From NCBI GenBank assembly GCA_000320545.1, contig ADNK01003163.1, positions 1 through 64,000 of the forward strand: DNA of 64,000 nt, in the 5' to 3' direction. Positions within the stretch are counted from its first letter, which is position 1. Each line of letters opens with the position of its first letter. Of this stretch, positions 1,651 to 64,000 are shown piece after piece. A model generated the notes under the pieces. That model was not told where the DNA came from and did no database searches. It saw only the letters and a program-made list of their open reading frames with translations. The position numbers were made by a program, and so were the translations under genes. This DNA is from Bigelowiella natans CCMP2755. Its lineage: Eukaryota > Protista > Cercozoa.

Positions 1651-2049
1651 TATCCTAATGCAACACCGCTGCACACACACACACACACACACACACGTGT
1701 GTGTGTGTGTATAGATTGTGTGCTGTCATGTCGTCTGCTAATAGTCTGTACCCCGCATCGCACAAATGAGCACAAGCAATGCATGTGAGCGACTGTACGC
1801 GACGTGAACGACAAAGCTGGGCCAGGCGGTATGTGTGTGCGCAGAGCGCTGCAAGCCCATTACTAGATCACCTTCTGTCCACTTTTGCATTGTGCAATGT
1901 GCTCGCACATTTCAACATGAGGACGTCAGAATTGTCCATGTAGCCACAAAAGGCCACAGAGCGTACCGAGTCAAAAGCACACATGTTCACTGAGACACAT
2001 GTGGTTTGCAAAGAACATGTGCACTGAACCACACATGTTCGTACGTGCG

Positions 2050-2990
2050 TACGCCACTGGTTCAATTGTTTGTGCAATCACATGGAGAGGTCACAAAACC
2101 ATCAAACTCTCAAATCACGTGTCAGGGAAGATGCCTGCGAATCAGGGCACATGAAAACAGAAGGACACGCAAAGATGGTCAATTTTTTGAACCTGCCATG
2201 CTGCTACCAAAACACACGGAGCAAGCTAGCAAGAACGGAACTGAACAAGGCAGACAAAGAAAAAATGGAAGACACAACATGCCAAAAGAAATGACAACCA
2301 CCAACAATGTGGAACTCGCCTGGTTTGGGGAAGGCCTTTCAAAAATTTCAGAGAGGCTGCATCCTCCAGCGGGATGCGAAGTGATGCGAACCAAAGGCTC
2401 CTCTGGGAGCTTTGGGTTGAGAAAAAAGAACACAGACATGATTCACATGCACACAGAAGACAACAATCACGACATTGGTTTTTTCACACATCGCATTGAA
2501 AAACATGCTGTTGCAATGGTTTGCCTCCAACCACACCAAAACATTTCACACCTCAAAGAGAGACCAGATTTCACAATGGACATCATGAAGAAACAGAAAT
2601 GGAAAAAATGCATCACAGTGGGAGACACCAACGCTGAACACTCCACCTGCGATGTCCTGAACCAAGAAGACAGACGTGGTGGATGTTGCTGCAGCTGATT
2701 GTGTGACAGACGAATGATGATCAAAGTCACAAGAGTGGCATTCAAGGACAAGTCAAAGGAAACCACACGACGGGTTGCTGCATCTTTCATGTGAACAGCG
2801 CCCAACCAAAATTTAGAGATGGGGAGCAGCGATTGATCAAGTTGTCGTGGCCGCCAAACGTTCAATGGTTTTCAAGTCCAAACATGCGCGATGGTCTTGC
2901 CTTGTTGTTCTCTGTTGGGTTTTGAGGATGCGCTTGGCGGAGAGACATCGATCAACCTAGCCGATTTCACACGATTCTCTGCATTCTCCA
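2050..2990 (+). mobile_element. Decayed non-LTR retrotransposon (LINE) APE-type endonuclease fragment, TpA-depleted
   Basis: ORF 2006-2698 contains VGDTNAEHS (GDFNAxH-like APE motif) and PAGCEV (PxGY-like with Y->C); intronless; only about 4 TpA in 2055-2990 (CTAC, CTAG, TTAG, CTAG). Confidence 0.55.
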
Positions 2991-3206
2991 CAATCTGTAT
3001 GTTGGTCATTCAGCAAGGGACTGAACACAAAGACCGGCACATAGCACCGAGGACTGCACAGTTGCCACAACGGTGAGGGCGACGACGATCGGCAGGATTT
3101 CCTCTCGACGAAGATCTTATCTTGCATCGGGTCGATTGATGTCGCAGTGTGAAATTCCCCTTTGATCGGCCGTATTTCCTCTTAGTCTCGACGTGGGTCG
3201 ATTGAT

Positions 3207-3316
3207 GTCGCGATTCAAAACTCCGCGTCCGTTTCGGACGTGAATCCAGAAATTCATCTGCACTCCGAATCGAAGGAGGGAACGTCCTAAACGGACGCGA
3301 AGTTTTGAATCGCGAC
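3207..3316. repeat. 34-bp inverted repeat with 42-bp spacer
   Basis: 3207-3240 gtcgcgattcaaaactccgcgtccgtttcggacg pairs with 3283-3316 cgtcctaaacggacgcgaagttttgaatcgcgac (2 mismatches); also a direct repeat gggtcgattgatgtcgc at 3129 and 3195. Confidence 0.85.
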
Positions 3317-8847: not shown

Positions 8848-10238
8848 CTAATTCAAGACCCTGTCTAACCACTCATTGATGCTAGGCACAATTGTAGGCA
8901 GCAGTGTAGGTTCCACCCCTTGTCCATCATTTTCGAAATCCAGCTCTGAAGGCATTTTTGCTGGAAAAGGGGAAGCAGGTGTCATTTTCGCTGGCGAAGA
9001 AAGGGAAGGTAGCAGTCCAACGCAGTAAGACGGCCTCCCACAACCAGGGCTGCAGCTGCTGGCTCTGGTGCCGGCAGGGGTTGTAAAATGTTGAAGAGGA
9101 TGTTGATCATAATGAAGAGTACGAGAAAAAGATTCACCGTAACTATTAACACCAGATTCTGTTCTGTAACGCTTTGGGCTGTGTGGCGTATCGTCTTGAT
9201 TTGGAGATGTCTGAGAAGTGTATCCCGTATCTGCTTCACCCAGAAAATTAAAAAAGATTTCTGTTTCATTCGCTCTAGATCTCTTTCTGGATTGACAAGG
9301 AGAGTTTGAAGGTGAAGAATGTCGGCTTGAATCCGGTGTAGAATCTTGTCGGTTTTCCGTTTCAGAATCATCCCCAAAGTGTTCCGCTACGTTCGCGTTG
9401 TAAATATTCCTTGATAATGAGTCTAAATGCGGAAAGATGTCTGATATCACCTCGCGCTTGATCTCTTCATCTTTATTGAGTCTTGAATATTTCTCTTTCG
9501 CACGTATTTTTTTTATTGCTTTACAAGACTTAGCAAGATGCCGATGGAGACAGCCTACGTCCCATCCTGGTCTTACGGTCTCCCTGGGCCTTCCGATTGT
9601 GATTTTTTTCCTTTGCCCGCACAGGGGACAAGTCATTTTGACCCCTATCTTTTTATCACGACGCACATTGATGCTCTCTGGAGGTGGTAAGCAACATCTC
9701 ATACACCATCCAGTCTGTTGAGCTCCGCAGCACTCGCACCTCGTCAACTTTGGAGACAGTGTTCTCAATTCATTCAGCATCTGCTCTTCAAGTTGAGGAA
9801 GGGAAGACGTTTGGCAGAGTGTCTGTCCGTACTCGTAAGAATGAGAATGCATTCAAATGAATTGGTGAATGCAAGCTGGGCTCTTCGAATTTGCGAATCA
9901 GCGCCGATGCTGGTTTCTGTTGGTGGAGGGAAAGTGAATCCGATGTCAGTATTTTTTTCGAAATTAATCGCATTTACGAGAAAATGGGGGCTTTTAAGAC
10001 TGTATTTCCACATAAACCCGGATTTATAGTGAAATCGGACGGAGTTATCCATCACATAATTTTTGATGATGAATCGGACAACTTCTTCGGCAAAGGTCGA
10101 CTCGAGAAGGCCGGTCTTCAATTTTCCGAAAAATGTTGTCTTTTCATCGTAAAACAAGCTGAATTGCAGGTGGTTTGCGTTACATTCTTGCACCGAGTCC
10201 AGAGAGTCCAACAAGGCGTCCATGTCTTCCAAAGTCAA
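8848..10238 (-). pseudogene. Intronless unknown gene split by one frameshift (ORFs 10238-9774 and 9852-8848) with Cys/His Zn-binding motifs; probable mobile-element cargo
   Basis: Two overlapping ORFs with no microsatellite introns; motifs CECC...CMRC and CPLC...HRHLAKSC (BED-like spacing) followed by a Ser/Pro-rich tail. No family recognised. Confidence 0.5.
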
Positions 10239-12029: not shown

Positions 12030-13060
12030 TATCTAACATAGCTGAGTTGTACGTGGGTGAGAGTGTACCGGTGGCATAGCACACACATGGCTAGCTAGCA
12101 CGATGCACTGGAATGCATAGCACATTGACGATATCGCACAGCACCGCCATGCATGTACGTGCTGCATGACCACAAAAGTGCGAAACTGTTGTCGACCATT
12201 CTTGATGACAGGGCACACAGCAAACGGCCACCATGTATGCTGGATCAGATCACACTGCACAATAGCATGGGCACTGTGACTGGTACGGCCAGCGCGCACA
12301 CGAAGCGCAAGCGAGTTGCTGCATGCAAAACAATGCGAAAGCCACAATGCGCGTTCCAAGCAACAAAGCATGCACCTGTGTGCACTTGATGAGTCGTGCG
12401 CACGTCCCCCACATCGCAATCGATTGAAAACCAAGTGGGCTGCGAGTGTTGTTGTGTGGCCCCGCCGCCAAGCGATGATTAAACGCGCACATGACGTCTC
12501 ACATGTGCACATTTTGCGAGCCTTCGAGTTTCGATTCAACTTTCCAATGCAAAGCAGGCTGCAACAACACTTTCCGATCCACTTCGCGTGGTGTGTCTCG
12601 TGGTGTATGCTCCCGTGCTAGCTAGCTAGCGTGCACCCACGCTAGCCACGGTGGACCTGACAAGGCAGCTGGCGCCAGCTGGCGCTGGGAAAATGCACTC
12701 ACTTGCTTCTGCTGCGTTGCTCATCATGCGGCGGGCACTTTTGTTCCTTTTCCACATTTTTGTCACTCACCAAGCAAGAACTTCCCTGGGACCTGAATCG
12801 ACGTTGGTGCCGTTCACACGGAGTGGCTCGGTGGTGAAAGGAGCGAAGCGGCGCGCACAAATGCAATGGGGCGAGAATGAGCCGAACAGCAACGATGTAA
12901 CTACTTGCTCACGATGTTTTCCCGATGGGAACTCGGACCACCTGTGAACGCTTGGCGAAGAAGCCACAAAGGAACCGCCATCTCTCTGCACACCTCAAGC
13001 GGGCTGGGCGGGTGCAAGGACGCAAGGACTGCATGCAAGGTGCACATCATTGAATAAATG
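12030..13060. mobile_element. Unclassified repeat island, TpA-depleted
   Basis: 12300-13050 retains only a few TpA, mostly in gctagctagc; contains the mutated copy of the 46-bp repeat (12898-12943). Confidence 0.6.
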
Positions 13061-13205: not shown

Positions 13206-14108
13206 ATGGATCTGACAAATTTTCTCCTAGAAAAAGCAGCATTTTTTCGGTTTGCCTCGGCAGCAGGTATGAGTAAGACACATGGTGTTTTCAGGGTGCG
13301 ACAAGGATTCTGGAGGATTCTAACTTAATAGTAGTGCTCGTAGGTACAACTCGTGCAACACAAACAAAAAGAGCTCCCCCTGAGCCCTCTGAGCCCTCTT
13401 TCTTGGACCCAGGATTGGACTGGAGGAGGAGGAGGAGGAGGAGGAGAAGAGGGGGGCCTCCCTGCAGATTTCGACGAGAACAGTAACATCAGCATGATGA
13501 ATCAAGACTCAAAAGAAGACAGTGATGCTGAGAACAGCGTGAAGGTGATCCTTCAACACACAAGCGGTTGGGACCCAGAGCGGAAGATGAAGAAGGCACA
13601 TGATCTCTTTGAGGAATCCATCAGGTGTCACAGATCACATTTTGACAATGGGACAAGAAGAATGGTTCCGACACTGCTGTGGTATGCGTCGCTAGGTTTC
13701 ACTGTGGAAGAAACGGAAGGAAAATCGACAAGATATCGTCTAGGAAGCTGGCAATGCAGGTCGTTCCATTGAATTAGCGGCGCTTCAGCTCCTTCATCAT
13801 CTAGGATGATAACATCAGGCATCAGCTCTTGGTCACCGAAGTGCTTTGGCAGAGTGCTACTATAGGGGATGGGGAGGTTGTCGTGAAGGAAAAAAAAGAA
13901 AACTACTAAGAAACAACATGTTGCTGTGTAATTCAAGATCTTTTCTTTTCGTAGCGTGCAGCTTATTCTACTCCTTTCAGTGAAGCAAAGTTACGATATG
14001 GCTGTTGAAATATGTCGGGAAGAAGCAAAAGAGGGCATAGCTTATGCACAGTTTAAGTTGGTACTCATCAGAACGATGTTCGTCATAGTTGCATGGCTAC
14101 CTATGTTG

Positions 14109-17858: not shown

Positions 17859-18109
17859 CTCTCCACGGCAACCACTCCCTCGTTGTAGCGAGAGGGGAGA
17901 AAGGAAGTTGTCCTACATGCTCGTTTCGACGATGCGGTGAGCCTCAAGCCGCAGCCGTCGGGCAGATGTCGTCTACGTTGGGCTTGTTGTTGCAAATCTG
18001 GACAATTTTGTGTGCTTAGAACATCTCATTCGCGACTTCGTATGTTTGCACAGGATCATCATTGGCAATGTTATCAAAAGTTGTCATCGAATTTGGTTCG
18101 AAATATGTG

Positions 18110-19380
18110 CATGTTTCACCTTGAGACTGCGCAATGTCCGCTTGAGACAACTGCTCATTCGGCTTCATTCGTGCATTTTCTTCTTTCATTCTTTCATTCT
18201 TTCATTCATTCTTTCTTTCTTCGTTGTTTTCAGCTCGAGGCACTGCGTTTCGCACTTTGCAAGTGTCATGATGTTTCTTGTTTCTCATTTGGCTGCTAGT
18301 TGTGATGCATTCAATGTTTAGTTCGTGCCAATTTGCATGAACCCCGCTAGTTTGCTGGTCAGTCCTCACTGAAGCCAGTTCGAGGCACTGCATTTCGCGC
18401 ATTGCAAGTGTCTTGTCACACTTTGGAAATGCAGCATTTCATCATTGTTCTCATTGTTCTTGTTTCTTTCCCAGCCGCTCGAAGTGCGTCCAGCTTGTCA
18501 GCAGTGTTGTGCACGTCTTGTTGGAGTGTGGAAGTGAACACGACACGATCAATCAATCTTCTTTGTCTTCTCCTTCTTCTTCTTCCTCTTCTTCCCCTTC
18601 TTCTGGGACCAAACGAACCAATGTCATCTTGCTACCTTGCAATGAGTTGCGGCTGGGATGCAGCAAAGGACGACGACGCGCTAGCGCGACTCAAACACTG
18701 ACCGGCCAACTCAGTTGTGTCCAGCAAGTGCACCTGCCCTGTCTTGTTTCAGAAACAAAGTTGTCGTCGTCGATTGATGACCATCAATCAGGATCAGGAT
18801 CAAATTGGTGCATTGCAACAACCACAAAAAGAAAAAAATCTACATGGAAATCGAAGGACGAGTGAGGCAGTGGACACAAGACGTCATGCTTGCTTCAGAT
18901 GGCAAGAGGAAATCAAGGGAGAAGTGCTCAAGCAAGCCAGCAAGCGTGTGAAGGCACAGAAGCACAGATGCAACTTGTGGGTGCACGGTGCACTTGGACC
19001 GCGCTAGCGCGCGCACAGGAACGCCTCGCACAGCTTGGCAAAAACCTGAGCACTTGTGCTGGTGTGGCGACACGTGCACGAACCTGCACAACCCAGACAA
19101 TTTGCATGCACGTGTGAGAAAGTGGGACGCACGATGGCTAATGCATGCGGCCAGCGTCCTGCTTGGGCACATGCACCCAACTGGTCCAAACGTGCACAAA
19201 CACACATTGCAGCAATGCATCTGGGCAATGTCAGGGCACGCGTTACGCTTGTCCGACATGCGTGATCACGCGTCGTTCTAGCGCTGTTCGTTGTGCACGC
19301 CAAGAAGCATGCATGCAGCAGGACCAGAGTGAGCTAGGACGCAGCACAGCCGTTAGATTCCACAATGCAAACAATGATGC
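18110..19380. mobile_element. Unclassified repeat island, TpA-depleted, between the PSMG4 5' end and the NTH1 3' end
   Basis: About a dozen TpA in ~1.27 kb, nearly all CTA/TAG; two inverted copies of the cagtgcctcgaact motif (18231-18262, 18364-18407). Confidence 0.7.
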
Positions 19381-20847: not shown

Positions 20848-21985
20848 TCTGTCTGCTAGACTACTACGTTTTCCCCTAATACAACAGCTGCTAACAACTC
20901 AAATTTGCCTTGGTTTCACCTCTGCAAGTCGTTCACAGCCCATAAGATCTACCGGCGCTTCTTCCCCATGCTCTAATAAAGAATAATCAGGCGAGAAACA
21001 ACGATGAGGGGATCATCATCTCACAACAAATATTATTATGGGTAACCGGCAATCATACATACATACATACATACATACATAAATTTATAGGTAGTTCTAC
21101 AACAACACCTATTGGCACCTCTCATAGCTCGAATACTGTTGTAAACTTTTTCCCAATTCTTTGGGGATGTTGGCTGCTCTCTTGCGACTTCATCAGCCTC
21201 CATACTCTGTCCTTTGCTCTTGTCTCGCTCTTTCACGTCATCACGCTCTTTCACGTCATCATTTGGGTTGGAAGCATCGCCGTCATTACTACTAAAGGTA
21301 CAGAGTACCCTGCTCGTTATTGGGATAGAATGTGTGCGTTTTACACGTCCATTTCTTGCAATCCTGGCCCCGTTCTTACGCATTGTAGGTAAAGCTCCTC
21401 CATTTAGGGCACACTCTTCGATATCATCACACCAAGCTGCCGCTGTGCAAGTTGTCGAAGTGAGTTTTATTCCGCCATTTTTCTTTTGCTTCCCCCGCTG
21501 GCAAAGAACTGAGCCCCCCTTTCCCCCTCCACCCGAAAGGCAGCTTCTTCTTCTCATGAGGTTGGAGTTTGGGGATCCTCCTCTTGATGGCGCATATACT
21601 ACGAATGGATTGCCTAACCCATACTCTCTTATGTGAAATGGAACGCTTCTCCTGACTACTCTCTCGCATGAGCTTCCCAGTCTCACCACAAAAGGTAACG
21701 CAGAAGCAGCGATGTTTTTACAGGTGCTGCTCTGTGTGATACAGCGGTTGGTTAGTAACATTGGCGTCACAAGAAGTACAAGGAGGAGGGCTGCCGAAAA
21801 TAAGACTATCAGGCGTTTGGCAGGAATAAGGCGAACAGCAGCCCAGCGAACGAGGAGGACACGGAGGGGCGTAAAAGGCTTACAACAATCTACTAGATGA
21901 GTTGATGATCCTCGAGATGGAGCTCTCTTCATTCCCTTTTGTTTCGCATATCATACAACAAAATGACGATGGTGACGACAATGAC

Positions 21986-22027
<42 letters not shown>

Positions 22028-22400
22028 AAGGAGCAACCGCTGATCGATCCCTCAAAACAACGGCTTCCAAACTGGGGTTATTACCCGAGGGAGGGAGAGG
22101 CAAGTTGATTGTGGCAGCTGCTCGTGTGACGACGGCAAATTGACCGTGATTTTGGCCTTGCGACAAGGTTTTAATTGACGGGGATTTTGACATTGCGACA
22201 CGGTTTCATCGCCTTACGAAGTGGAGATTTTGGGCCCTGCGACAATTGCGGGGACGCCGATGGCCACGACGGTGGCCGCTTGCTCGCGAGCAGGATGGAT
22301 CTGGCCTTACTCCAAGGCTAGAGCATCTATGCGGAACATGGCGCACAAATTGTTCCTCCATGGTAAGGGCAAGACGTTGCCATACATTCGCTTTCGGCAT
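19406..22400 (-). CDS. NTH1: Endonuclease III-like DNA glycosylase/AP lyase (HhH-GPD, 4Fe-4S)
   Basis: Exons: [15 protein letters not shown]|[73 protein letters not shown]...[48 protein letters not shown] (FeS cluster). Start uncertain (22400 or 21932). Confidence 0.95.
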
Positions 22401-24921: not shown

Positions 24922-25490
24922 TATAGTGGTTTTTCTTGTTTTCTATGGTTGGTCTATATTTATAAAAAATGAAGACAACAACTGATGTGCAAATAAAATG
25001 TTACCTGCGTCGTGACTATTCTATCAAATTAAGTGTTCTGTCATTCCTTATTTTATTAACTGCACATACAATTATACTGCAGGCAGAGGCACGCGCTGTA
25101 TTGTCAATATTGAACGACACGTTACATGGCCGGTATGAGGCGGCGACCCAATCCTTCCTCTCGACTTGCGCGATACCGGACGCGGTACTGAATCTTCCGA
25201 AACTAAGGGATAAAATTCGGTCGTTTCTACAACGGGCTCACCAGATTCAGAAGCAAGGACAACAGCAGGGCGCTTATCTTGAATCCTTGCAAGATTTAGC
25301 CCAAATTCGAAGAGAGCACAGATTTGCTATGCGGAGCAACTTCACGCCGTTCATAGTAAGTAGCCTTTTGGTTGAGGGGACGACTGCTGGGCATTGTCAA
25401 GTCGTTGACTCGCTCATCCAAACTCTAGGTGGCGAAGATGGAGGCTTCGCGAGTGAGCTACTAGATCTGTACATTGATGCAACTCTCTAG
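22567..25490 (+). CDS. ABC1/UbiB atypical kinase, ADCK2-like (multi-exon)
   Basis: GTTWIKLGQWMSTRPDLFP...LADLQD, PVASGSIAQVHRGVL...VAVKV, QLDLRVE, LLHNYVHADLHPANILV, VILDCGL; stop at 25490. Confidence 0.92.
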
Positions 25491-25499
25491 GGGCAACGT

Positions 25500-27625
25500 G
25501 TTTTTTGAACAATGAAGAAAGGCGGTCGCCGATCGATGCGACTTTGCACATGTGTGCTTCATCACACATTCAGCTACATGCGTGAGCTTGGCAGAATTGG
25601 CACAATCTGGGCGAGTGCACTTGCACCGTGTCGTCACAGCTGGCTAGCTGGTGGTGAGGTGATCTTTGAGTTTGCATTGTTATGCATGTGTGTTGCTCGT
25701 CGTTGCACTGCTAGACAGATCAGCTGCACCTTCATTTGACTCGCGCTCGCTCGGGCTCATCTGCTCATTGTTTCGAAACAGCGCGAACACGCATGGCAGA
25801 CCAGGTGCAATAAATGACATCAAGACCTGATCCAGTGGTGGTGAGCAGCGTTTTGTGATTTGCTTCACTCCTCACGAGTCACTCGGCCTCTGCACTGTCG
25901 TTTGATGCACCACATTGCATTGTCCTCTTGTCTCCGGGCCACGCCTGATTCCGTGCCAAACTGCGCCACGTGAACGAGGCTTTCTTGTCATGGTTTTCGA
26001 ACCCACGCGCCACGTCAATGTCACGTTCAATGTTCAATGTTTTGGTTCCATGCGTTTTGTGTGAAGGTGTCGCATTCTAGCATTGGCTGCACGTGGGGGA
26101 ACAGCGCGTCGCTGTTCTGATCATCCTGCCAGCCTGGCTGGGGCCTCACACCCTTGCAGCCAGGTCATCCGTCCAAGCTGGCAAGAGTGCGACAGGCCGG
26201 CGGGCGTGAAACTGCACACAAAACACACCCTCAACTTTTCCTGACCAGTTGATTGAGAAGGTCACGGATGAATCAGCGTGATGCGTGAAATCCTTTCCGT
26301 GGTTCAGCCGCTCCTGTGCAACTGCTTCGTTCGTTCATTCGCCTCGTTCGATCGCATTGCACAGCTCGTTTGTTTGGCTAGTTGGGGAGGATGAGTCAGC
26401 GTGTCCCATGCCAGCACGACCCTTTCAAGTGCTCCAACAAATCACTTCTTCTTTCTTTCTTTGCGATTGATCGTTTCTCCAAACATCAACTGTCAAAATC
26501 TGCAAATGCTTGCGGCTTGCATCGATCAAGCTAGCTAGCTAGCAAGCGATGCGAACTAGCCAGCTAGCGAAGTTCAAGGTCTGATGATGAAAAACCGCAT
26601 TTCAAAAAACGTTGCAAAAAGTTTGCAGTGCACGAAACGCAGTGCCTCGAACTAGCTCCAGTGACGGCGAAGAAGCAGAGGATTTGGATGATGGCACACC
26701 TCGGAAACCGGAAACCCTGGGCAGGAAACAATGTGGAATTTGAATTGATGTGGGATTTCAGGCAAAAACGCCTAGATCAACACATTGCATTGCAAAATGG
26801 CCGAGGATGATGCATGGTTACGACAAGGCATGTCAAAATTATCTTTTTTTGGGTCATCATGTGATGTTTCGTCCCAAATGTCCGACAACCTTTTTGGATG
26901 TGAAATGTTTGAATTTTGAACATTGTTGTTCAAAATCTGGAAGATCCAGACGACACTTTGGGAGTCTGCGTGTGGATTCTGACGAAGTGCACGTGCTCTG
27001 TTTGAACACCAACGGGTCCATTGACACCATGAGCGCGCCGTGTGAGCTTCGAGTGGTGTGATGTCACATTTGTGGTGCGTGGCAGTGTGTTTCGTGTGTT
27101 TTCGTCTGTGTTTCATGCGTGGTGTGTGTTTGTGACGTGGACGAATGGAGGAAGGGATCACATTGTGCGTGCCTCAGTGCAACGTTGAGTGTCAATTGCG
27201 GTGTGTGTGGTCATTGCAAGTGTCTTGTGTCACACAGATGTGTGTGGGAGGGTTGGCATGTGCCTGTGTGCATGAAGAAATCATCAATCTCTTCTCCTTT
27301 GGGGCATGAACCAACTTCATTGCTGAACACATTTCATGCATGTGATCCAATGTGCAATGTCATCATTTTTTGCAGCAGCAGTTTGGCAAAACGAATGCGA
27401 CAATGATGATGGTTTGTGATGCAGCCAAACAACTGTCACTGCGTGCAACCGCGCTGAGCTGGTGCACACGCATGTCTCATTGATGCAGACACGTGTGCAT
27501 GTCATGGCATGGCGTGTGCACGATGGATTCGCGCGCGCGCAACGTGATGCTGCAATCCATGGATGAACCACTGCACAGCATGATTGTGATGAAAAACGTG
27601 ACTTGGTGACTGCTGATTGCGATGA
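25500..27625. mobile_element. Unclassified transposon-derived DNA, TpA-depleted, contiguous with the pogo-like element
   Basis: Only ~16 TpA, 12 of them CTA-context; no microsatellite introns; includes the cagtgcctcgaactagc motif at 26623-26664. Confidence 0.6.
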
Positions 27626-30265
27626 TCAAATGACTGCTTTCGAACAAATGCGCTCATGCACTTTCATCTCATCAACAGATCTGATGCAACCCCCGCAGTG
27701 ATGCAAACTGCATCCACTGCAACTGTGCCATTTCCAATGATGTGAATTTTTCCTCTTCACTTTCTCAGGCATCAAATCCATCCATGCTCCTCTCAGCACG
27801 TGACACACGCCACAAGAATCGGACCAGTCAGGACACTTCTTCCAACTCTTCTTGCGTTTGTTGGATGATGCTGCCATGCATGTTTTGACGACGAAAGCAT
27901 CGAACTGTTTGTCTGCCTTGCAGTGTTTCCTGTGGGATTTCAGTGCGTCCTCAGAACAGCAGTCTGGGCACCACCACTTGGTGCACACGTCACAAGACAA
28001 TTGAGAATTCCACCCGTGATCATTCGGATTGGTTGCATCCTCAGGCAGCTCTGCGAATGCATGTTTTGGCACTTTGCACGTGTGACAAGACACACAATCC
28101 TGATCGATGACTGACATCCGTCTGCAGCTCCTGCAGTGTTTGCGTTGAGACGTTCTGATCTTGACTGACTGTTCATCGGCTGCCTTCTTTGCATCCTCCT
28201 TTTCCTTTTTGTTTTTTTCTTGCTCCTTCTTGCCATCTGGACGTGTTCTCCACTGCCTCCATCCGTCGTGTGTCAATGTGACTGATCTGTTGCTGCTCTC
28301 CTTCCGCTCGTGCACAACTTTCTTGTCAGGGTCGTGCAGCACGTCCACAGGCACGTGCTTGGCGTTGAACTCCGATTCTGTCGTGTGGCCCTTGGAGTTC
28401 ATTGACATTGCGAAGTGTGGAATCAATCTCATGGCCTTTGTTCGCCAATCTGGGAGCCGGATGAAGCCTTTGCAACGTTCAGACATCTCATCTGGATTGA
28501 ACGGATGCACGCCCGTCATCTCGAATGATTTTCTCACTTTGTCAGGGGTGCAACCCTTCACTGGCACCTCTGACATGCGTCCCAGAAAGCTGGGCAGAGA
28601 GGCCTTGAACGCAGCAGGAATGTCCTGATTTTCCCTCATTGCTCTCTTCACTCCGTTTGACACTCTCTTGCGTTTGGTTGACGCGACGTGCTCTTCGCTG
28701 TCGTTTTTGTCGTCGGTCTTTTGTTTGTGTTGACAATGAGCTGTGCTGTGAACCTGACCCACGTCCGCCGCGGCTGGTGGTCAGCGCTCGCCGAGGCAGG
28801 GGACTTTCCTGTCACGTGGTTGTGCAGTGCCAAGTGTCCAATGTCGTGTTTCACGTGCACCACTTGTTGGCTCTCCCCGTCTTGCATTTCGAAGAATGGG
28901 AGATCATCTTCCCCCGCCACCGCACGGCATCTGTTGTCAAATGGAATGATCATCTCCTCCATCAATTTTTTGTGAACCTCAGCACGTGAGGTCTCTTTCC
29001 CGGTCGTCCACAAATGACCTGGGCCACTCACGTCCTTGGTTCCTAGCTCTGGCACCTCGACGAACAACGGAGATGTGGGCTTCCCAAAAGACTTCCAAAG
29101 TGCAACGGGCCCTGAAGATCCTGACGCGGTGAGTGGTGCAGTGCACTTGGTGCTTTGATCTGGTCTTTTGCCAGGACCTTCCCTTGATGAACCCCTGGAG
29201 TCTTTCGCCCCTCTCTTGGAAACATGCGGATCTGCAGACTTTGACATCTTGGCATGATCCTCATCAAATTTCTCACAGGTCCAATCTGCATTTCCCACAC
29301 ATTCTCGGGGAAGAACGTGACGCATCTTCCCCGTTTTGATGCACGCATCGGTGTCCAATGCGGTGCACACTGTGAGAGATGCGAAACTCAAAAAATTGCG
29401 AATGCCATCTCCTGCTGTGCATCTTGCTCTGGTGCTTTCTTGTCCGCGTTTGGTTGAGTTTTCGATGGACGTGATGGCCTCCAACGTGTGCTTCTTTGTC
29501 TCAGCAGTCAATGAATTGCATTTCACGTTCTCTTTGCCGAACACTCTTGATCCAAAATTCGACTGCCTGGCCTGCTCAGACTTCAGCAAAGATTCGATCT
29601 CACTCAACCTCACAGTGAGGTCGTTCTTGTGTGCCAGTTCCACTTGATCGAGAATCTTGGCACACGCGATTGGGATGAAGGGCATGAGGACGACCTGATG
29701 AGGGCAGCACTTCGTTCAGGCAGAAATCTTCGTCAGTGTCAACCCTTTTCAGTTTTCTTGACCAACGATGCAGACTGGACCTACTAATTCTCCCGCTCAA
29801 CCTTCTGACGAGTGCAGGGATCATTGCACCGAGTGTGCCCTTTGCAATCGCGTCCATTGACCGCTCCGCTGCGTGCCTCCTTTCCTCCGTGCTGAGAGCG
29901 CCAACGGACGACGAGGTGCTGCTACTGTTGGCCGATGAACATGACGCGTTGTCATCATCAAGCACCACAGGAGGTGGGACAGTGTGCAGCTCGGGAAACA
30001 CGGTGGAGGTGGACACGGTTGACACGGAATCGGACACAGAAGAGGACGAGGATGCGCGACGGCTAGCTCTGGAGTTCGACGCGTTGAGCACATGCTGCTC
30101 GTTTCTAGCCTTCTTCCAATGCTCTTCCGATGATGAAGTCTTTTTCTGCAGTTCAAACAAATTCTGCATGGCTCGCATGACATCAGCCTGGGCGTCCTCG
30201 ACAGAGGCGGTCGCCACGTCATTGGTGGTGGAAGCTTTCCTCTTCTTTTTGCCCGATTTCCCCAT
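27626..30265 (-). mobile_element. pogo/Fot1-like (IS630-Tc1-mariner) DDD transposase, two frameshifts, TpA-erased
   Basis: Three sequential ORFs. ORF1: HTH-like ISRSSLHRW...GRP. ORF2: NADWT (D1), MQDG (D2), KSPASASADHQP. ORF3, across a frameshift: ADVG (QPxD, D3, ~37 aa after D2), SFEMTGVHPFNP (pogo GxYPFNP motif with Y->H), then two Cys/His PHD-like fingers. No Tyr in any of the three ORFs. TIRs not identified. Confidence 0.85.
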
Positions 30266-30938
30266 CAGAGAGACCGCTCAACCCAATGTGGTGTCACATG
30301 TGTGTGTGTTTGATGCTTTGGTTGCGATGGATGTGTGCAGAGTGTTTGTGTAGGGCCACACCAGCGCGTGCGAAGGGAGAGAAAGGAGACAGAAAGGACG
30401 AAGGCTCAGGCGTGTATCGGAAATAAGACAACGCCGAACTAAAAAAAAAAGGAAGGTACTGACGTCGTTTTTTTTTAACACAATATGACCTAAAATGACC
30501 AAAAAAGTGACGAATTGGCGGGAAACACAAACGAAATGGCTTCCCGCATTTTCTGTTAGCGCATTTTTGGGTGAAAATGCCTAGAAAGAGTGCCAGTCTC
30601 ACATTAATTCAAATCCCACATTATTTCCATCGCAGGAAACCCGCATTTCAAAATGACAATTTGCTACGGCAATCACGACATGGCCTGTGTTTCACATCTA
30701 CGTCCATGAACTCAAGGGAAAAACAGAGAGAAATCCATGTGTCATCTCGCACATTTAAACATAGGGGAGTTTTAAGGATTTCTTCGATGTTTCTCCAACC
30801 GACACGCGGGTTGGGCGTCGTCATGGTCTGTGCGTGTCAACCAACCAGATTGCTTCATTTTTTGTACTGGGATTTACACACTATTTTCACAGACAGTCTT
30901 GAATTATTTCATGAATGGCATGTATTTTGTGTCTTTAG

Positions 30939-31766
<828 letters not shown>

Positions 31767-31849
31767 GAAGGATCAATTGATCCACACGAAACAATGAAGT
31801 GAAGCAGAATGCATGCAACGTCACAAATTTACATCAGTGTTAGCATCGC

Positions 31850-33118
31850 ATCAGATTTGCAACTGAAACCATCAACAAAAAGTGTGACCTGAACACATGA
31901 GTTCTCAATGCGATTGCGTCACACTTGCAACGCATCACAGACGTGCAATGCGATGTGTGCAACATGCATCATGTTGCTGTCACTGTGTCCATCATGCGTG
32001 TGCGCGAATCGCATGCGATCGAGCACGCGAATCGCATGCGATCGAGCACGAAATCGCTGGGGCATGTTTGCAAGGCATGCCGTTGTGGTGTCTAGCTAGC
32101 TAGCTTGGCTAGGTGTGAGTGGGGAGCTGAGCAAGGACAGCATCCGGCCTCTCACTCAAGCCAGACGCACACGTTCCAATGATCACCTCCACCATTGTGC
32201 ATTGAAAACATTCACACACACCACATCCGTGTTGCATCATCACCGCCATCACGCAACGCACACTGCTGATGATCGACGTCACAATTGCCAGGCTAGCAGG
32301 TTGAGCTTCGTTTTGTCACTGTCACTTGACCAAGTCAGCAAGCAATCCAGGAATGCGTGCAGGACCCACGGGGTCCCATGTGTGTGTGCATGTGTGTGTG
32401 TTGTCTGTGACGTGTGCATCGACCACTTCACATGCATCTCCAAGCTCAGGTGCAATGCAAGTGAATCAGCGCACACACGAACACGTCTAGCTAGCTAGAC
32501 GTGGCACACGTGTTGATCGTGACTTGTTTGGCACACACGACTCCGTCAATGTGCCCTGTGACGACTGGGTTTTGCACAAACCATGCTTGCGCGCGCGGCC
32601 TGGCACGCTCAATCGTTGCAATTGGACATTGGAAGCACACTGGAGCCTGTTTGAAGTTCAAGTTTGATTTTTTTTCGAATTTCAGCTTCAAAACTTCACT
32701 TTTCAACGCCTGCCAGCGGAAAATGCCACTTCTGAAACAGCTAGCGCAGTTGCACTTGCTGTGCCACAAATTTTGCAAGCTCATGAAGGTGTGCGCACAC
32801 TGGCTTCACGTGCTTGCAAAATTTCAGCACAAAAACGCAAAAAATGCTCCAATTGAGAGGTCATGCCACTCGTCACAGGTTTGACGGAGTTGATTCGTCA
32901 ATGCAGGGGTCCTGAGAATGTGAGAACCAAAGCGAACATTCCAGGAAAGCTCAAAGCTCAGACTCGTGCTCCGAAATGGGATGACGAATCAGGAACAAGA
33001 ACAAGAACAAGAACAATGATGATGAACTACATTTCCAAAATGTTGCAAGACATTTGCAGTGTGCGAAATGCAGTGCCTCGAACTAGCTTTGGTGAGGACT
33101 ACAACTAGCAAACTAATG
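31850..33118. mobile_element. Unclassified repeat island, TpA-depleted
   Basis: 14 TpA by hand count, all in CTA context (11 CTAG); includes a 23-bp tandem repeat at 32003-32048 and the cagtgcctcgaactagc motif at 33054-33097. Confidence 0.75.
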
Positions 33119-61535: not shown

Positions 61536-62199
61536 CACACATGCGTGTGGAGCACGCCTCTCATGCACATGGTACATGCCTGATATCGCCTAACCTGATG
61601 ACGTCACTTGCGAGCAAATTTCCTTAGTTTGCAATTGCATCCATGCTGTGTGTATGCGAAGCAGCGCAAGCCATAGATTTCTATAGTGGACACAGCAATT
61701 CCATGTATGTATTACGTGGTGTCTATCATTTCTTAGCTGTGCAATGATGCAGGGGCGTAGTTGCGTCATGGACTGTTAATATATTTGACTCGCGATTTTT
61801 GATGGAGCGCCACTAGCGTCGCACGGTCGTGGCGGCACTGTCGCACATGCACACGTCAGATTGCACTTCCAGCTGCAGATGCAGCTAGTGTATCGCTAGA
61901 TCGTGAAACGAGTTTGCTTGCAGATCTGCATCTTTAGATCTCTAATCTTTTCTGCGCTGACGACTGCTGAAGCTCGACTACAAACTACGTGTCGCATGTA
62001 TGCGTACACCGCACCCACATTCTAACCATCATCCCAACTTTGTCATGAGGTGCACATACAAGCAGGCCTGTAAGCTTGTAATTGTACATGTTTCACCGTG
62101 TCGACAGTCTGCCCGCCTGTGTGTCATCTATCAACTAGCAGTACGTTTTAGCGGGCTTGCGGTAGCTGCTTAGCTTTTGTGCGCGGGACTGTGCTGATG

Positions 62200-62561
62200 T
62201 CACTGAGTGTCAACACGCGGTCCTGTGTGCGTTTGAATTGTGTTGATGACTTGTGACTTGCGCTGCATGCATGTGCGCATTGGGTTCCGGCGCATTCGCG
62301 AAGATTCTCGAATCTTCCAGAATTCTCTCGAATTCTCTGGAAGATTCTCGAAGCTTCCGGAATGCTCTCGAAGATTCTGGAAGATTCTCGAATCTTCCGG
62401 AATGTTCTCGAAGCTTCTGGAAGATTCTCGAAGCTTCTCGAAGATTCCCGAAGTTCTGAGAACTTCCATGCGCATGTGCGCAGCGCAGCGTGCAGCACGA
62501 GTGGACGTGCGCATGCTGCGACAGCTCCTTGATCGTGGGTGGCGCGGCCAGACCGCTGACA
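62200..62561 (-). mobile_element. Putative Copia LTR (TpA-erased) preceded by a polypurine tract
   Basis: On the minus strand, catgggggcg|TGTCAGCGG (PPT-LTR junction at 62561); candidate TGACA end near 62198-62212; no TpA in 62173-62854. Confidence 0.5.
62295..62467. promoter_or_regulatory. Long heat-shock-element-like array (GAAnnTTCnn)n
   Basis: 11 consecutive in-phase 10-bp units at 62340-62449 (one TTC->CTC mismatch) plus flanking units; a second ttcYRgaa cluster at ~62927-62980. Confidence 0.7.
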
Positions 62562-62990
62562 CGCCCCCATGGACGTGGTGACCACGATCAGAGTGCTGAT
62601 GTGCACGTGCCATTTCTGCCATGGTGACAGAACTTTTGCACGGTGCTGCACATGGACGCCATTCCCAAAGGTTTCGGAGTCCGAATGGTTGGCAAAATTT
62701 TGCCGACCAAACATCGCACCACCAGACGCCTGAAACTCTGTGCAGAGGCACAAAATTCCCAGGCTTGCAACTGGGCAAGGTGCCATGGGCATGGTGCACT
62801 CCGAAATCGGCAGGAAAAATTCTTGCCTGACTGGGCAAGGTGCCACCATTTCGGTACGAACTGGGACTTGTCCAAAAAATTAATTTTTTAAACGACACCA
62901 GTGTGCTTCCAGAAAAAATTCTGGAATCCCTCACGTGCTTCCAGAAAACATTCTGGAACATTCTGGAACATTCTGGAACACCGATCTGGT
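62562..62990 (-). mobile_element. TpA-depleted internal 3' region of the older LTR element
   Basis: Lies immediately 5' of the PPT on the minus strand; TpA-void to 62854; ctgggcaaggtgcca repeated at 62771 and 62831. Confidence 0.45.
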
Positions 62991-63064
62991 TTCCCATAGT
63001 CAGGTCCCCAAATTTAGGAACTTCGATCGACCGTGCTTTTAACTCTTCACCTTGCCCCACCTCT

Positions 63065-63398
63065 TGTGATGAGGCGAGCTACGTACACGTCCACGTCCCC
63101 CAATGGAGCTCTTCCCTGAGAGACGAAATTGCGGGCTGGGCTCCAAATACTGTTGGCTGGCTGGGTTGCAGCCATGCCAGATCGAGAAGGAATGCCGAAG
63201 AGAATACAGTCTGCCTTCGTGGGTCTGAAGGCATCATACTCTGGTCATAGCGACATTGTTCTTCCACACCTCCACACAGGGAAGGCAGTTTTTTTCTGTC
63301 TTATTTATTTTTAATTTCGTAGGTATCTCGTAGTATATAGCCTTATATCTTGTTCTTGTTTTGTAGGTATCCTGTCTTTGTTCCACATTCGCCCCCAT
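63065..63398 (-). mobile_element. Putative 3' LTR and PPT of the TpA-intact Copia element
   Basis: atgggggcgaa|TGTGGAAC junction at 63387, downstream of the RNase H ORF; candidate ...TCACA end at 63065; normal TpA content. Confidence 0.45.
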
Positions 63399-63620
63399 GA
63401 TTGTGCAGTGTCTGGAAGACAGACACTGTGCAATTATATAATCCATAGCGTAATTTACATTCGCCCCCATCGGAGCTGTGCACATAGCTGTGCATATAGT
63501 CCATAGTAAGATACGCAAGGAAAGGTACACACATATAAAGATGTGTGCCATTAAAACCTTGCAGCCTATATGTTCATATGTTGTAGGTTTCTAGATGGAC
63601 GTGGGGCTTTTATAGGGCGT

Positions 63621-64000
63621 CTAAGCGGACGTGGGGCCGACAAGGCGAGGGAGCTTGTAAGGTAGAGCCTTTGTTGTTATTTTTCTTTTTCTGGTGCCTT
63701 GTAGCATGATGGTTAGTTTTTCTCTGTATGATATAGGGAACAAGAAATCACAGTGTTTCTTGTTGCTAGGTCCTGGTAGAGCCTTGGTAAGTATATCAGC
63801 GGGATTGTCCTCCCCAGGTATTTTGTTTATGCAGATCTGCTTGGTTTGATAGTTATCACGAACATTGTGATATTCTATCCTTATGTTCTTGCCTTTCTGT
63901 GTGAATCCAGGCTTGGCTGCAATGGAGATAGCTGCTTGAGAGTCACAATACACAGGTACAGGGTTCGGTATTTTCATTTTTAACTCCTGTAGTAACTGAG
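63621..64000 (-). mobile_element. Ty1/Copia pol C-terminus (RNase H)
   Basis: VPVYCDSQAAISIA...KGKNIRIEYHNVRD...IPGEDNPADILTKAL, the canonical Copia RNase H motifs; runs off the window edge. Confidence 0.95.

What the first reader, a model, noticed from the sequence alone, without database searches (positions are those of the whole stretch)
25500..30410. Repeat-targeted TpA erasure (a 'reverse RIP'): about 5 kb of transposon DNA almost free of TA
Seen: reading every line, I found no TA dinucleotide in ~26832-29042 (2.2 kb) and ~23 in 25500-30410, whereas genes and introns nearby are TA-rich. TG, CA and CG are abundant instead. Equivalent islands recur at ~2050-2990, 12300-13050, 18110-19380, 31850-33118 and 62173-62854. 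All are intergenic; the ones I can classify are transposons, from three unrelated classes (pogo, LINE, LTR), so this is not one element's native composition. Established: fungal RIP converts CpA to TpA and creates TA; 5mC decay removes CpG. Neither removes TA. Inference: a genome-defence process converts TpA to TpG/CpA (A->G or T->C), with CpG where both strands are hit. I know of no description of this. Alternative: a TpA-specific base modification in silenced repeats is miscalled by single-molecule sequencing, which would itself be novel.
Basis: partly seen in the sequence, partly recalled or inferred. Interest (0 to 1): 0.95.

Follow-up and report, generated by a model that had tools for sequence, protein, structure and literature searches.

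The report
Known TpA-erasing hypermutation of transposons
About 5 kb of silent transposon-like DNA in this alga has had nearly every TA turned into TG or CA by a real DNA hypermutation process, which is striking but was already reported for Bigelowiella natans in a 2026 preprint.

Summary
Window 25500-30410 has 23 TA where about 221 are expected (o/e 0.08), and 26840-29044 is a 2,204-bp TA-free gap. Contigs from independent 2025 DNA runs match the unique part without one difference, so it is not a sequencing artefact.

It is a mutational footprint. The island's only paralogue (C1058) shows CA against TG at 40 dinucleotide sites. The LINE fragment at 2040-2740 has 42 of 46 consensus TA converted, and none became CG. 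Two other copies of the window's copia element lost about 93% of their TA, and their own LTR pairs differ only at TA sites.

Near-identical LINE and copia copies are untouched and unique DNA is hit, so the process is not triggered by repetition. CpG is not produced. The 62173-62854 "island" is the natively TA-free LTR of an intact copia element.

The process is already described (Mettrop et al., bioRxiv 2026, Bigelowiella natans), and this scan found it before on other pieces of this genome.

Details that the preprint's main text does not report:
- CTAG is almost immune to conversion.
- TG and CA outcomes show no strand-coordinated runs.
- A MITE and the copia LTR are natively TA-free.

The enzyme is unknown.

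The parts
25500..30410 (.). Main TpA-erased island, intergenic and close to transcriptionally silent.
   Evidence: 23 TA, o/e 0.08. 14 of the 23 are CTAG. Edges are sharp. Raw RNA reads of X21 give about 0-0.3x over 26748-30700, against 3.2x on the flanking gene.
27930..30637 (-). Degenerate pogo/Tc5-like DNA-transposon copy. It has one paralogue, at G000:C1058:44722-47435.
   Evidence: 93.4% identity over 2,719 bp. 164 substitutions, 153 of them transitions, and 40 CA/TG discordant dinucleotides split 20:20. The last 220 bp or so keep some TA in both copies.
27629..28780 (-). Open frame for the C-terminal part: the end of a DDE_1-like domain and a Cys-rich tail. It is part of an annotated 844-aa gene model (P0001).
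   Evidence: P0001 is 100% identical over 357 aa and has 0.0% Tyr. Its homologue P0002 (E 1e-19) resembles Transp_Tc5_C/DDE_1/HTH_Tnp_Tc5 clusters, top score 0.90. There is no Pfam HMM hit.
28651..29715 (-). Open frame for the middle part (presumed DDE core), in a different frame from its neighbours.
   Evidence: Only the C1058 paralogue matches it in the genome. No Pfam or Atlas hit.
29603..30277 (-). Open frame for the N-terminal part, basic and HTH-like by eye.
   Evidence: No significant Pfam hit.
25500..27929 (.). TA-free DNA with no other copy in the genome, apart from a short repeat inside it.
   Evidence: The search of the window's own genome finds only window 26584-26699 repeated, and nothing else for 26800-27929. 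Contigs of runs X1 and X14 match 25300-27959 with 0 differences.
26584..26699 (.). Fragment of a high-copy short repeat, the same family as 18285-18460.
   Evidence: 361 candidates in the genome. Depth of about 11,000 in DNA contigs.
2040..2740 (+). Hypermutated fragment of a LINE, from its endonuclease region.
   Evidence: Intact copies (L039-L042, about 99% alike) carry PF14529 and 47 TA in 671 bp. The window copy has 4 TA. Of 46 consensus TA, 17 became TG, 25 CA and 0 CG.
12201..13000 (.). TA-poor island, single copy in the genome, origin unknown.
   Evidence: o/e 0.13-0.21. No other copy in the genome. No Pfam hit.
17901..19200 (.). TA-poor island holding a 176-bp high-copy repeat at 18285-18460.
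   Evidence: o/e 0.17. 588 candidates for the repeat. The consensus TTTAG site is converted in 9 of 15 copies, the three CTAG sites more rarely.
31841..33118 (.). TA-poor island just downstream of the polyubiquitin gene. It includes a MITE at about 32532-32892.
   Evidence: o/e 0.17. The MITE family has more than 40 copies and terminal inverted repeats. Its consensus has TA only inside CTAG, even where the flanks are TA-rich.
62143..62855 (-). 3' LTR (62143-62561) and the adjacent untranslated stretch of an intact Ty1/copia element (62143-68316, which runs beyond the window). Natively TA-free, not mutated in place.
   Evidence: The LTRs are 419 bp and 99.76% alike. RVT_2, rve and copia gag are present. 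At least 9 copies are 99-100% identical. The TA-free state is shared by both subfamilies, while the interior has 10-24 TA per 250 bp.

Best explanation
The island is the end state of the TpA-specific DNA hypermutation that Mettrop et al. (bioRxiv 2026) measured in mutation-accumulation lines of Bigelowiella natans.

Shown here. In a silent intergenic domain of about 5 kb, which includes a dead pogo/Tc5-like transposon copy, the A of 5'-TpA-3' was changed to G on one strand or the other. Each TA therefore ended as TG or CA. Because TpA is self-complementary, the first hit removes the target on both strands, so CG is not made. The process acts on chromosomal DNA after integration. It runs to near saturation far faster than background mutation. 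It is specific for a 5' T by 20-fold or more. It almost never touches CTAG. Its limits lie within a few hundred bases of the element ends rather than exactly on them.

Inferred. Some copies and domains are chosen while identical copies elsewhere are left alone, so the trigger is local (chromatin, transcription or RNA guidance) and not sequence repetition. The chemistry is adenine deamination to inosine by a DNA-acting deaminase. The enzyme is unknown.
For: - Reality. DNA contigs from independent 2025 runs reproduce 25300-27959 with 0 differences.
- Direction and target. The LINE copy has 42 of 46 consensus TA converted to TG or CA. Copia copies L069 and L070 have 330 of 367 and 340 of 366 substitutions as A>G or T>C. 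Their ancestral TA ended as TG 140, CA 136, kept 27, CG 6 (L069) and TG 124, CA 163, kept 17, CG 3 (L070). A>G per strand is 46-47% after T against 0.4-2.2% after A, C or G, and C>T is 0-1.2% with no CpG effect.
- Independent hits after duplication. The two pogo-like copies have 40 CA/TG discordant sites. The window LINE copy and L038 agree at 22 converted sites and disagree at 18.
- After integration and fast. The two LTRs of L070 differ at 3 positions, all at TA sites (TA against CA, TG against CA), with 0 background differences in 416 bp.
- Both strands equally, without long tracts. Runs tests on TG against CA give z = -1.6 and +1.6.
- CTAG immunity. 0 of 10 and 4 of 10 CTAG sites converted, against 261 of 285 and 269 of 283 other TA (p = 1e-10 and 8e-6). 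37 of 90 residual TA in the window's islands are CTAG, against 128 of 3,738 outside (p = 2e-28). 214 of 571 are CTAG in islands at other loci.
- Silence. RNA reads are almost absent over the island.
- Agreement with the preprint. All 230 A>G or T>C mutations in its two hypermutable viral insertions (231 mutations in all) are reported there as falling on TpA, and it counts 124 genome-wide TpA-depleted clusters.
Against: - The organism's name is hidden by the tools. Identity with B. natans rests on the Rhizaria-type polyubiquitin junction, on genome size (91.4 Mb of contigs against about 94.5 Mb implied by the preprint), on the identical and otherwise unique signature, and on 14 DNA runs of one organism label, each under its own study code.
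- No de novo event was seen at this locus.
- Because TpA is palindromic, sequence cannot tell adenine deamination from a thymine-directed lesion on the other strand.
- The library type of the DNA runs is not on record in the tool.
- The TA-free state of the copia LTR and of the MITE is inherited, not made in place, so not every TA-free stretch is a local footprint.
Confidence: 0.9

Rival explanations
1. A RIP-like process set off by homology: sequences present more than once are recognised as repeats and mutated.
For: Several islands are transposon copies. Both pogo-like paralogues are mutated. As in fungal RIP, the mutated zone leaks a few hundred bases beyond element ends.
Against: At least 13 LINE copies (four aligned here, about 99% alike) keep 47 TA per 671 bp. 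At least 9 copia copies at 99-100% keep a TA-rich interior. Window 25500-27929 and 12201-13000 have no second copy in the genome yet are stripped. The preprint's 186-kb hypermutable viral region is single copy.
Confidence: 0.07
2. Native composition: the DNA arrived TA-free, or was purged of TA by selection, with no local mutation.
For: This is true for two pieces. The copia LTR with its adjacent stretch (62143-62855) is TA-free in near-identical active copies and in both subfamilies. The MITE consensus has TA only in CTAG, even inside TA-rich flanks.
Against: For the main island, 40 CA/TG discordant sites between the paralogues require an ancestral TA. The gene model has no tyrosine at all, while an intact homologue has 2.5% and sits on a contig with TA o/e 0.79. 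For the LINE fragment, the intact consensus carries TA at the converted sites.
Confidence: 0.04
3. Sequencing artefact: a TpA-specific base modification is miscalled.
For: None found.
Against: Contigs from 14 other DNA runs of 2025 hold 86-94% of the island's words. Two of those runs were laid on it and match the unique part exactly. A miscall would give one outcome per site, not TG in one paralogue and CA in the other. The preprint called the same changes as new mutations in Illumina data against a parental line.
Confidence: 0.01
4. Editing at the RNA level (ADAR-like, on U-A) of transposon transcripts, fixed by reverse transcription.
For: The preference for a 5' U/T matches ADAR (preprint discussion). 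LINE and copia elements pass through RNA.
Against: Only the sense RNA is copied back, which would give TG alone on the sense strand. The observed outcomes are TG 140 and CA 136. The two LTRs of one inserted copy were converted independently. A DNA transposon, unique flanking DNA and integrated viral DNA are hit as well.
Confidence: 0.02
5. The same targeted process, but with chemistry on thymine: a modified T in TpA mispairs with G and gives T>C. Adenine is not deaminated.
For: TpA is self-complementary, so every TG or CA outcome fits a lesion on T just as well. Thymine modification with a TpA preference is known from dinoflagellate 5-hydroxymethyluracil (my own knowledge, not tested here).
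Against: No Tet_JBP (PF12851) match in the genome, which is a weak negative because the search goes exon by exon and the control rang nowhere. Deaminase candidates exist: ADAT2/3 in the preprint and one A_deamin gene.
Confidence: 0.15

Closest known systems
TpA hypermutation of integrated viral DNA in Bigelowiella natans (Mettrop et al., bioRxiv 10.64898/2026.01.13.699255)
   Same: The same signature: A>G and T>C confined to TpA, TpA loss coupled to CpA+TpG gain, clustered in domains a few kb long, with DDE transposase and reverse transcriptase domains enriched among TA-poor genes. Probably the same genome.
   Different: The preprint measured new mutations in a giant-virus insertion and a virophage insertion, and treats transposons only as 'potentially' targeted. 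Here the saturated end state is shown on LINE, copia and pogo-like copies against intact relatives. CTAG immunity, the absence of TA->CG, the lack of strand-coordinated tracts, untouched identical repeats, and the natively TA-free LTR and MITE are not in its main text (for CTAG). Its Table S2 gives only 3-nt contexts.
Repeat-induced point mutation (RIP) of fungi
   Same: Dinucleotide-specific transition hypermutation that kills mobile DNA in place and leaks a little into the flanks.
   Different: RIP changes C to T at CpA and so creates TpA. It is set off by duplication and acts in the sexual phase (established knowledge). Here the change is A to G at TpA, it destroys TpA, and identical repeats are left alone.
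ADAR hyperediting, including ADAR action on the DNA strand of DNA:RNA hybrids
   Same: A to I (read as G) with a preference for a 5' U/T.
   Different: ADARs act on dsRNA and belong to metazoans. Here the chromosomal DNA of both strands is changed. The genome shows a single A_deamin gene, and no dsRNA-binding domain was seen in the exon examined.
APOBEC3/AID cytosine-deaminase hypermutation of retroviruses and retroelements
   Same: A host-inflicted, context-specific deamination footprint on mobile or viral DNA.
   Different: It targets C (C>T/G>A), usually on one strand during reverse transcription. Here C>T is at background, 0-1.2%.

Membership tests
B. natans TpA hypermutation (Mettrop et al. 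2026) | Substitutions almost exclusively A>G and T>C | tested here: met
   330 of 367 and 340 of 366 in the hypermutated copia copies. 51 of 63 in LINE copy L038. 153 of 164 differences between the pogo-like paralogues are transitions.
B. natans TpA hypermutation (Mettrop et al. 2026) | Mutations confined to TpA | tested here: met
   A>G per strand is 46-47% after T, against 0.4-2.2% after A, C or G.
B. natans TpA hypermutation (Mettrop et al. 2026) | TpA depletion coupled to CpA+TpG enrichment over at least 3 consecutive kb | tested here: met
   Over 4.9 kb, TA o/e is 0.08, TG 1.56 and CA 1.62. The preprint's thresholds are 0.43 or less and 1.52 or more.
B. natans TpA hypermutation (Mettrop et al. 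2026) | The genome is Bigelowiella natans | tested here: inconclusive
   Names are coded. Consistent points: the polyubiquitin [11 protein letters not shown] junction, a Rhizaria signature; 91.4 Mb of contigs against about 94.5 Mb; window GC 44.1% against 44.9% for the nuclear genome; 14 DNA runs of one organism label, each in its own study.
B. natans TpA hypermutation (Mettrop et al. 2026) | New mutations arising at the locus in mutation-accumulation lines | not testable with these tools
   Only contigs of the DNA runs were available. The island has 9 TA left outside CTAG.
Fungal RIP | C>T at CpA, creating TpA | tested here: not met
   C>T is 0-1.2%, and TpA is destroyed, not made.
Fungal RIP | All duplicated sequences above a length and identity threshold are mutated | tested here: not met
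   Near-identical LINE and copia copies are intact.
ADAR-type RNA hyperediting | The substrate is dsRNA, so a genomic footprint would come only through reverse transcription of the edited sense strand | tested here: not met
   Outcomes are strand-symmetric. LTRs diverged after integration. A DNA transposon and unique DNA are affected.
pogo/Tc5 (DDE_1) transposons, for the element at 27930-30637 | DDE_1 catalytic domain, CENP-B/Tc5-type HTH and Tc5 C-terminal domain | tested here: inconclusive
   No Pfam HMM hit on the ORFs, on the gene model or on the homologues. For the intact homologue P0002, all ten best Atlas clusters are DDE_1, top score 0.90 with 171 shared features. No terminal inverted repeats or TA target duplication were sought.
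Ty1/copia LTR retrotransposons, for 62143-68316 | Paired LTRs flanking gag, integrase and RVT_2 in the copia order | tested here: met
   419-bp LTRs, 99.76% alike. Retrotran_gag_2, rve and RVT_2.

The most novel reading that the evidence does not exclude
The process has a sharp sequence exception, and the mobile elements have answered it. CTAG is protected, either by the enzyme's own specificity or by a CTAG-specific DNA modification. Noncoding mobile sequences that still move (the copia LTR and a MITE family) have become TA-free apart from CTAG, which makes them poor targets. That would amount to an arms race written in dinucleotides.
Probability: 0.3. Interest if true: 0.7.

Novelty: already known. 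Interest (0 to 1): 0.45.

Why it matters
A eukaryotic genome defence that edits A to G at TpA in chromosomal DNA has no counterpart among the classical systems (RIP, APOBEC, ADAR), and its enzyme would be a natural DNA adenine editor. That discovery belongs to the 2026 preprint. This window adds constraints that any mechanism must meet:
- one hit per TpA, and no CpG product;
- both strands hit equally, without long tracts;
- specificity for a 5' T of 20-fold or more;
- near-total immunity of CTAG;
- action after integration, much faster than background mutation;
- choice by locus rather than by repetition.

The CTAG exception is a simple assay read-out for candidate enzymes.

Tried and rejected
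- Pfam on 22 open frames of the islands gave nothing significant.
- The search for homologous proteins with the 384-aa frame found nothing. The Atlas found nothing for the 355-aa frame.
- Naming the organism through the look-up of encoding contigs failed, and run names are coded.
I therefore give no genome-wide fraction, and the CTAG count at other loci is biased towards repeats.
- Tet_JBP gave no match, but the control rang nowhere, so this is a weak negative.
- Idea rejected: the TA-free copia LTR results from a slow neutral ratchet along the active lineage. TA at synonymous codon junctions in pol is not depleted, o/e 0.87.
- Idea rejected: strand-coordinated tracts like APOBEC kataegis. The runs tests are not significant.
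- Idea rejected: CTAG immunity is the sum of a bad C at -2 and a bad G at +1. ATAG/CTAT sites are converted at 42 of 42 and 40 of 41, and the other flank effects are at most about 2-fold.
- The 'other letters' in the reads over 27930-30400 are the C1058 paralogue. All twelve sites I checked match it, so they are not new mutations.
- Majority states of the intact copia and LINE copies were used only inside scripts for counting.

Full report
**Observation.** Window 25500-30410 (4,911 bp, GC 0.51) holds 23 TA, o/e 0.08. TG is at 1.56, CA at 1.62 and CG at 0.82. The longest TA-free gap runs from 26840 to 29044, 2,204 bp. At the window-wide TA o/e of 0.77 about 221 TA would be expected in the island and about 100 in the gap, so P(0) is about 3e-44. 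A thousand mononucleotide shuffles never gave fewer than 243. TA o/e in 300-bp windows is bimodal. The low class makes up 11.6 kb of the 64 kb: 1901-3300, 12201-13000, 13401-13800, 17901-19200, 25501-30400, 31601-33100 and 62201-63000, plus two marginal 300-bp windows at 9601-9900 and 21901-22200. The edges of the main island are sharp, 25488/25575 on the left and 30351/30415 on the right. CpG is not enriched: 0.82 in the island against 0.79 window-wide.

**Not an artefact.** Fourteen DNA runs of 2025, all with one organism label and each under its own study code, hold 86-94% of the island's sampled words. Two of them were laid on the island. Their contigs match 25300-28332 (X1) and 25300-27959 (X14) with no difference. 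Over the duplicated part a second set of contigs appears. All twelve of its differing letters that I checked are those of the paralogue. Raw RNA reads (X21) give 3.2x on the neighbouring gene and about 0-0.3x over 26748-30700, so the island is close to silent in that sample.

**What the main island is.** Window 27930-30637 has one other copy in the 91.4-Mb genome, at C1058:44722-47435, 93.4% identical. On the minus strand it carries three open frames in different phases. The public annotation joins them into an 844-aa model (P0001). That model contains no tyrosine at all, which is what erasing every TAT and TAC produces. Pfam sees nothing in it. An intact 732-aa homologue (P0002, E 1e-19, on a contig with TA o/e 0.79 and 2.5% Tyr) resembles only DDE_1/Tc5 transposase clusters in the Atlas: top score 0.90, and all ten best hits are DDE_1. 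The left 2.4 kb (25500-27929) has no other copy in the genome, apart from a fragment of about 100 bp of a high-copy repeat.

**Proof of mutation and of its direction.**

1. The two pogo-like copies differ at 164 positions, 153 of them transitions. Eighty of those lie in 40 dinucleotides that read CA in one copy and TG in the other, split 20:20. Only an ancestral TA converted independently in each copy explains that.

2. The island at 2040-2740 is a fragment of a LINE. The genome search lists at least 13 copies of the family with nearly equal scores. The four I aligned are about 99% alike, carry an endonuclease-reverse-transcriptase frame (PF14529) and have 47 TA in 671 bp. The window copy has 4. 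Of 46 consensus TA, 17 became TG, 25 became CA and none became CG. A second mutated copy (C1487) shows 20 TG, 23 CA and 0 CG. The two copies agree at 22 converted sites and disagree at 18, as independent hits would.

3. The window's own Ty1/copia element (62143-68316, minus strand; RVT_2, rve, copia gag; LTRs 99.76% alike; at least 9 copies at 99-100%) is intact, with 10-24 TA per 250 bp inside. Two other copies (C485, C873) are nearly TA-free along all 6 kb. Against the majority state of four intact copies they carry 367 and 366 substitutions, of which 330 and 340 are A>G or T>C. Their 312 and 310 ancestral TA ended as follows: TG 140, CA 136, kept 27, CG 6; and TG 124, CA 163, kept 17, CG 3. 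Counted per strand, A>G is 46-47% after T and 0.4-2.2% after A, C or G. C>T is 0-1.2% with no CpG effect.

4. The two LTRs of the C873 copy were identical at insertion. They now differ at three positions, all at TA sites (TA against CA, TG against CA), with no other difference in 416 bp. The conversion therefore happened in chromosomal DNA after integration, and it ran to about 93% completion before background mutation left a mark.

**Consequences for the mechanism.** TG and CA are about equal and show no runs (z = -1.6 and +1.6). Both strands are hit, in many small events. This excludes editing of a sense transcript followed by reverse transcription. TA->CG stays at the background level of off-target changes (0 of 85 and 9 of 572 converted sites).

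**CTAG is almost immune.** In the copia copies 0 of 10 and 4 of 10 CTAG sites were converted, against 261 of 285 and 269 of 283 other TA (p = 1e-10 and 8e-6). In the window's islands 37 of 90 surviving TA are CTAG, against 128 of 3,738 outside (p = 2e-28). In the main island it is 14 of 23. In 82.5 kb of islands at other loci it is 214 of 571, though that sample is biased towards repeats. The effect is not the sum of half-site effects, because ATAG/CTAT sites are fully converted and the other flank preferences are at most about 2-fold.

**Targeting.** Repetition is neither sufficient nor necessary. Near-identical LINE and copia copies are untouched. The sequences 25500-27929 and 12201-13000 are unique and yet stripped. 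The depleted zone starts about 300 bp outside the C873 copia copy and continues beyond its other end. The C485 copy lies in a TA-poor stretch of more than 8 kb. In both pogo-like copies the last 220 bp or so are only partly converted. I read this as choice of a locus or domain, but that step is inference.

**Not all islands are alike.** Window 62143-62855 is the 3' LTR and adjacent untranslated stretch of the intact copia element. The TA-free state is shared by near-identical copies and by a subfamily about 87% identical. It is therefore inherited. It is not a slow neutral ratchet either, since TA at synonymous codon junctions in pol is not depleted, o/e 0.87. Window 32532-32892 is a MITE whose family consensus has TA only within CTAG, even inside TA-rich flanks. 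How these became TA-free is unexplained. Descent from a mutated master copy and selection to escape attack are both open.

**Prior knowledge.** The preprint of Mettrop et al. (bioRxiv 10.64898/2026.01.13.699255, April 2026) reports that 231 of 302 new mutations fell in a giant-virus insertion and a virophage insertion of Bigelowiella natans. It describes the 230 A>G or T>C changes among them as all falling on TpA. [quoted passage not shown] Its main text does not mention CTAG, and its mutation table gives only 3-nt contexts. Earlier notes of this scan had pointed to this paper and to CTAG sparing on other pieces of the same genome. I checked both claims here.

**Organism.** The tools hide the name. 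The polyubiquitin gene at 31075-31766 has a serine between monomers ([11 protein letters not shown]), which is the Rhizaria-specific insertion (PMC3014934).

**Enzyme leads.** The genome has one A_deamin (PF02137) gene, at C2414, with no dsRNA-binding domain in the exon examined. There is no Tet_JBP match, a weak negative. Adenine deamination is the most likely chemistry, but sequence alone cannot exclude a thymine-directed lesion.

**Verdict.** Its cause is a TpA-specific DNA hypermutation that has already been reported, so it is not new. The repeat-trigger and CpG parts of the interpretation fail. The details added here are useful constraints rather than a new system: CTAG immunity, no CG product, strand symmetry, action after integration, untouched identical repeats, and the natively TA-free LTR and MITE.

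Noticed in passing
window 31075-31766 (+): A polyubiquitin gene with three 77-codon units joined by an extra serine ([11 protein letters not shown]), which is the Rhizaria-specific insertion. The third unit ends early at a stop (…LVLRL*), just before the TA-poor island that starts near 31841.
   Followed up: partly
window 27629-30277 (-), protein P0001: The public annotation carries an 844-aa gene model stitched across the three frames of the dead transposon. It has 0.0% tyrosine, a protein-level mark of complete TA loss that could be used to screen proteomes for such islands.
   Followed up: partly
window 32532-32892; L056-L060: A MITE family of about 365-405 bp with terminal inverted repeats (CACAACTCCGTCAAACC…) and more than 40 copies. 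Its consensus has TA only inside CTAG, even where the flanking DNA is TA-rich.
   Followed up: partly
window 18285-18460 and 26584-26699; L017-L030: A 176-bp repeat with at least 588 candidate copies in the genome. In most loci one flank is strongly TA-depleted, as if it were the end of a larger, usually mutated element.
   Followed up: partly
window 62143-64000, continuing to G000:C574:68316: An intact, probably active Ty1/copia element. Its LTRs differ at one position, and a copy at C394 is 100% identical over 4.2 kb. The LTRs contain tandem GAAGATTCTCGAA-like repeats of about 40 bp.
   Followed up: partly
G000:C2414:14438-15741 (L071-L073): The only A_deamin (ADAR/ADAT1-type) deaminase locus found in the genome. 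The preprint does not discuss it as a candidate.
   Followed up: partly
whole window, e.g. 36100-57000: Very many microsatellites, including (ATC)n, (TAC)n, (TA)n, (TG)n and (CT)n, in the TA-rich part of the window. (TA)n tracts often run straight into (TG)n.
   Followed up: no
preprint Table S2: By my count of the part I read, A>G in TAG context is rare (about 4) while T>C in CTA context is common (about 18), although both put G at +1 on the hit strand. A few T>C are listed in ATG or ATT context, that is, not at TpA.
   Followed up: no
L074 (Logan contig of SRR27444842): An intact 732-aa homologue of the island's transposase, on a contig with GC 0.44 and TA o/e 0.79, from a sample I could not identify.
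   Followed up: no
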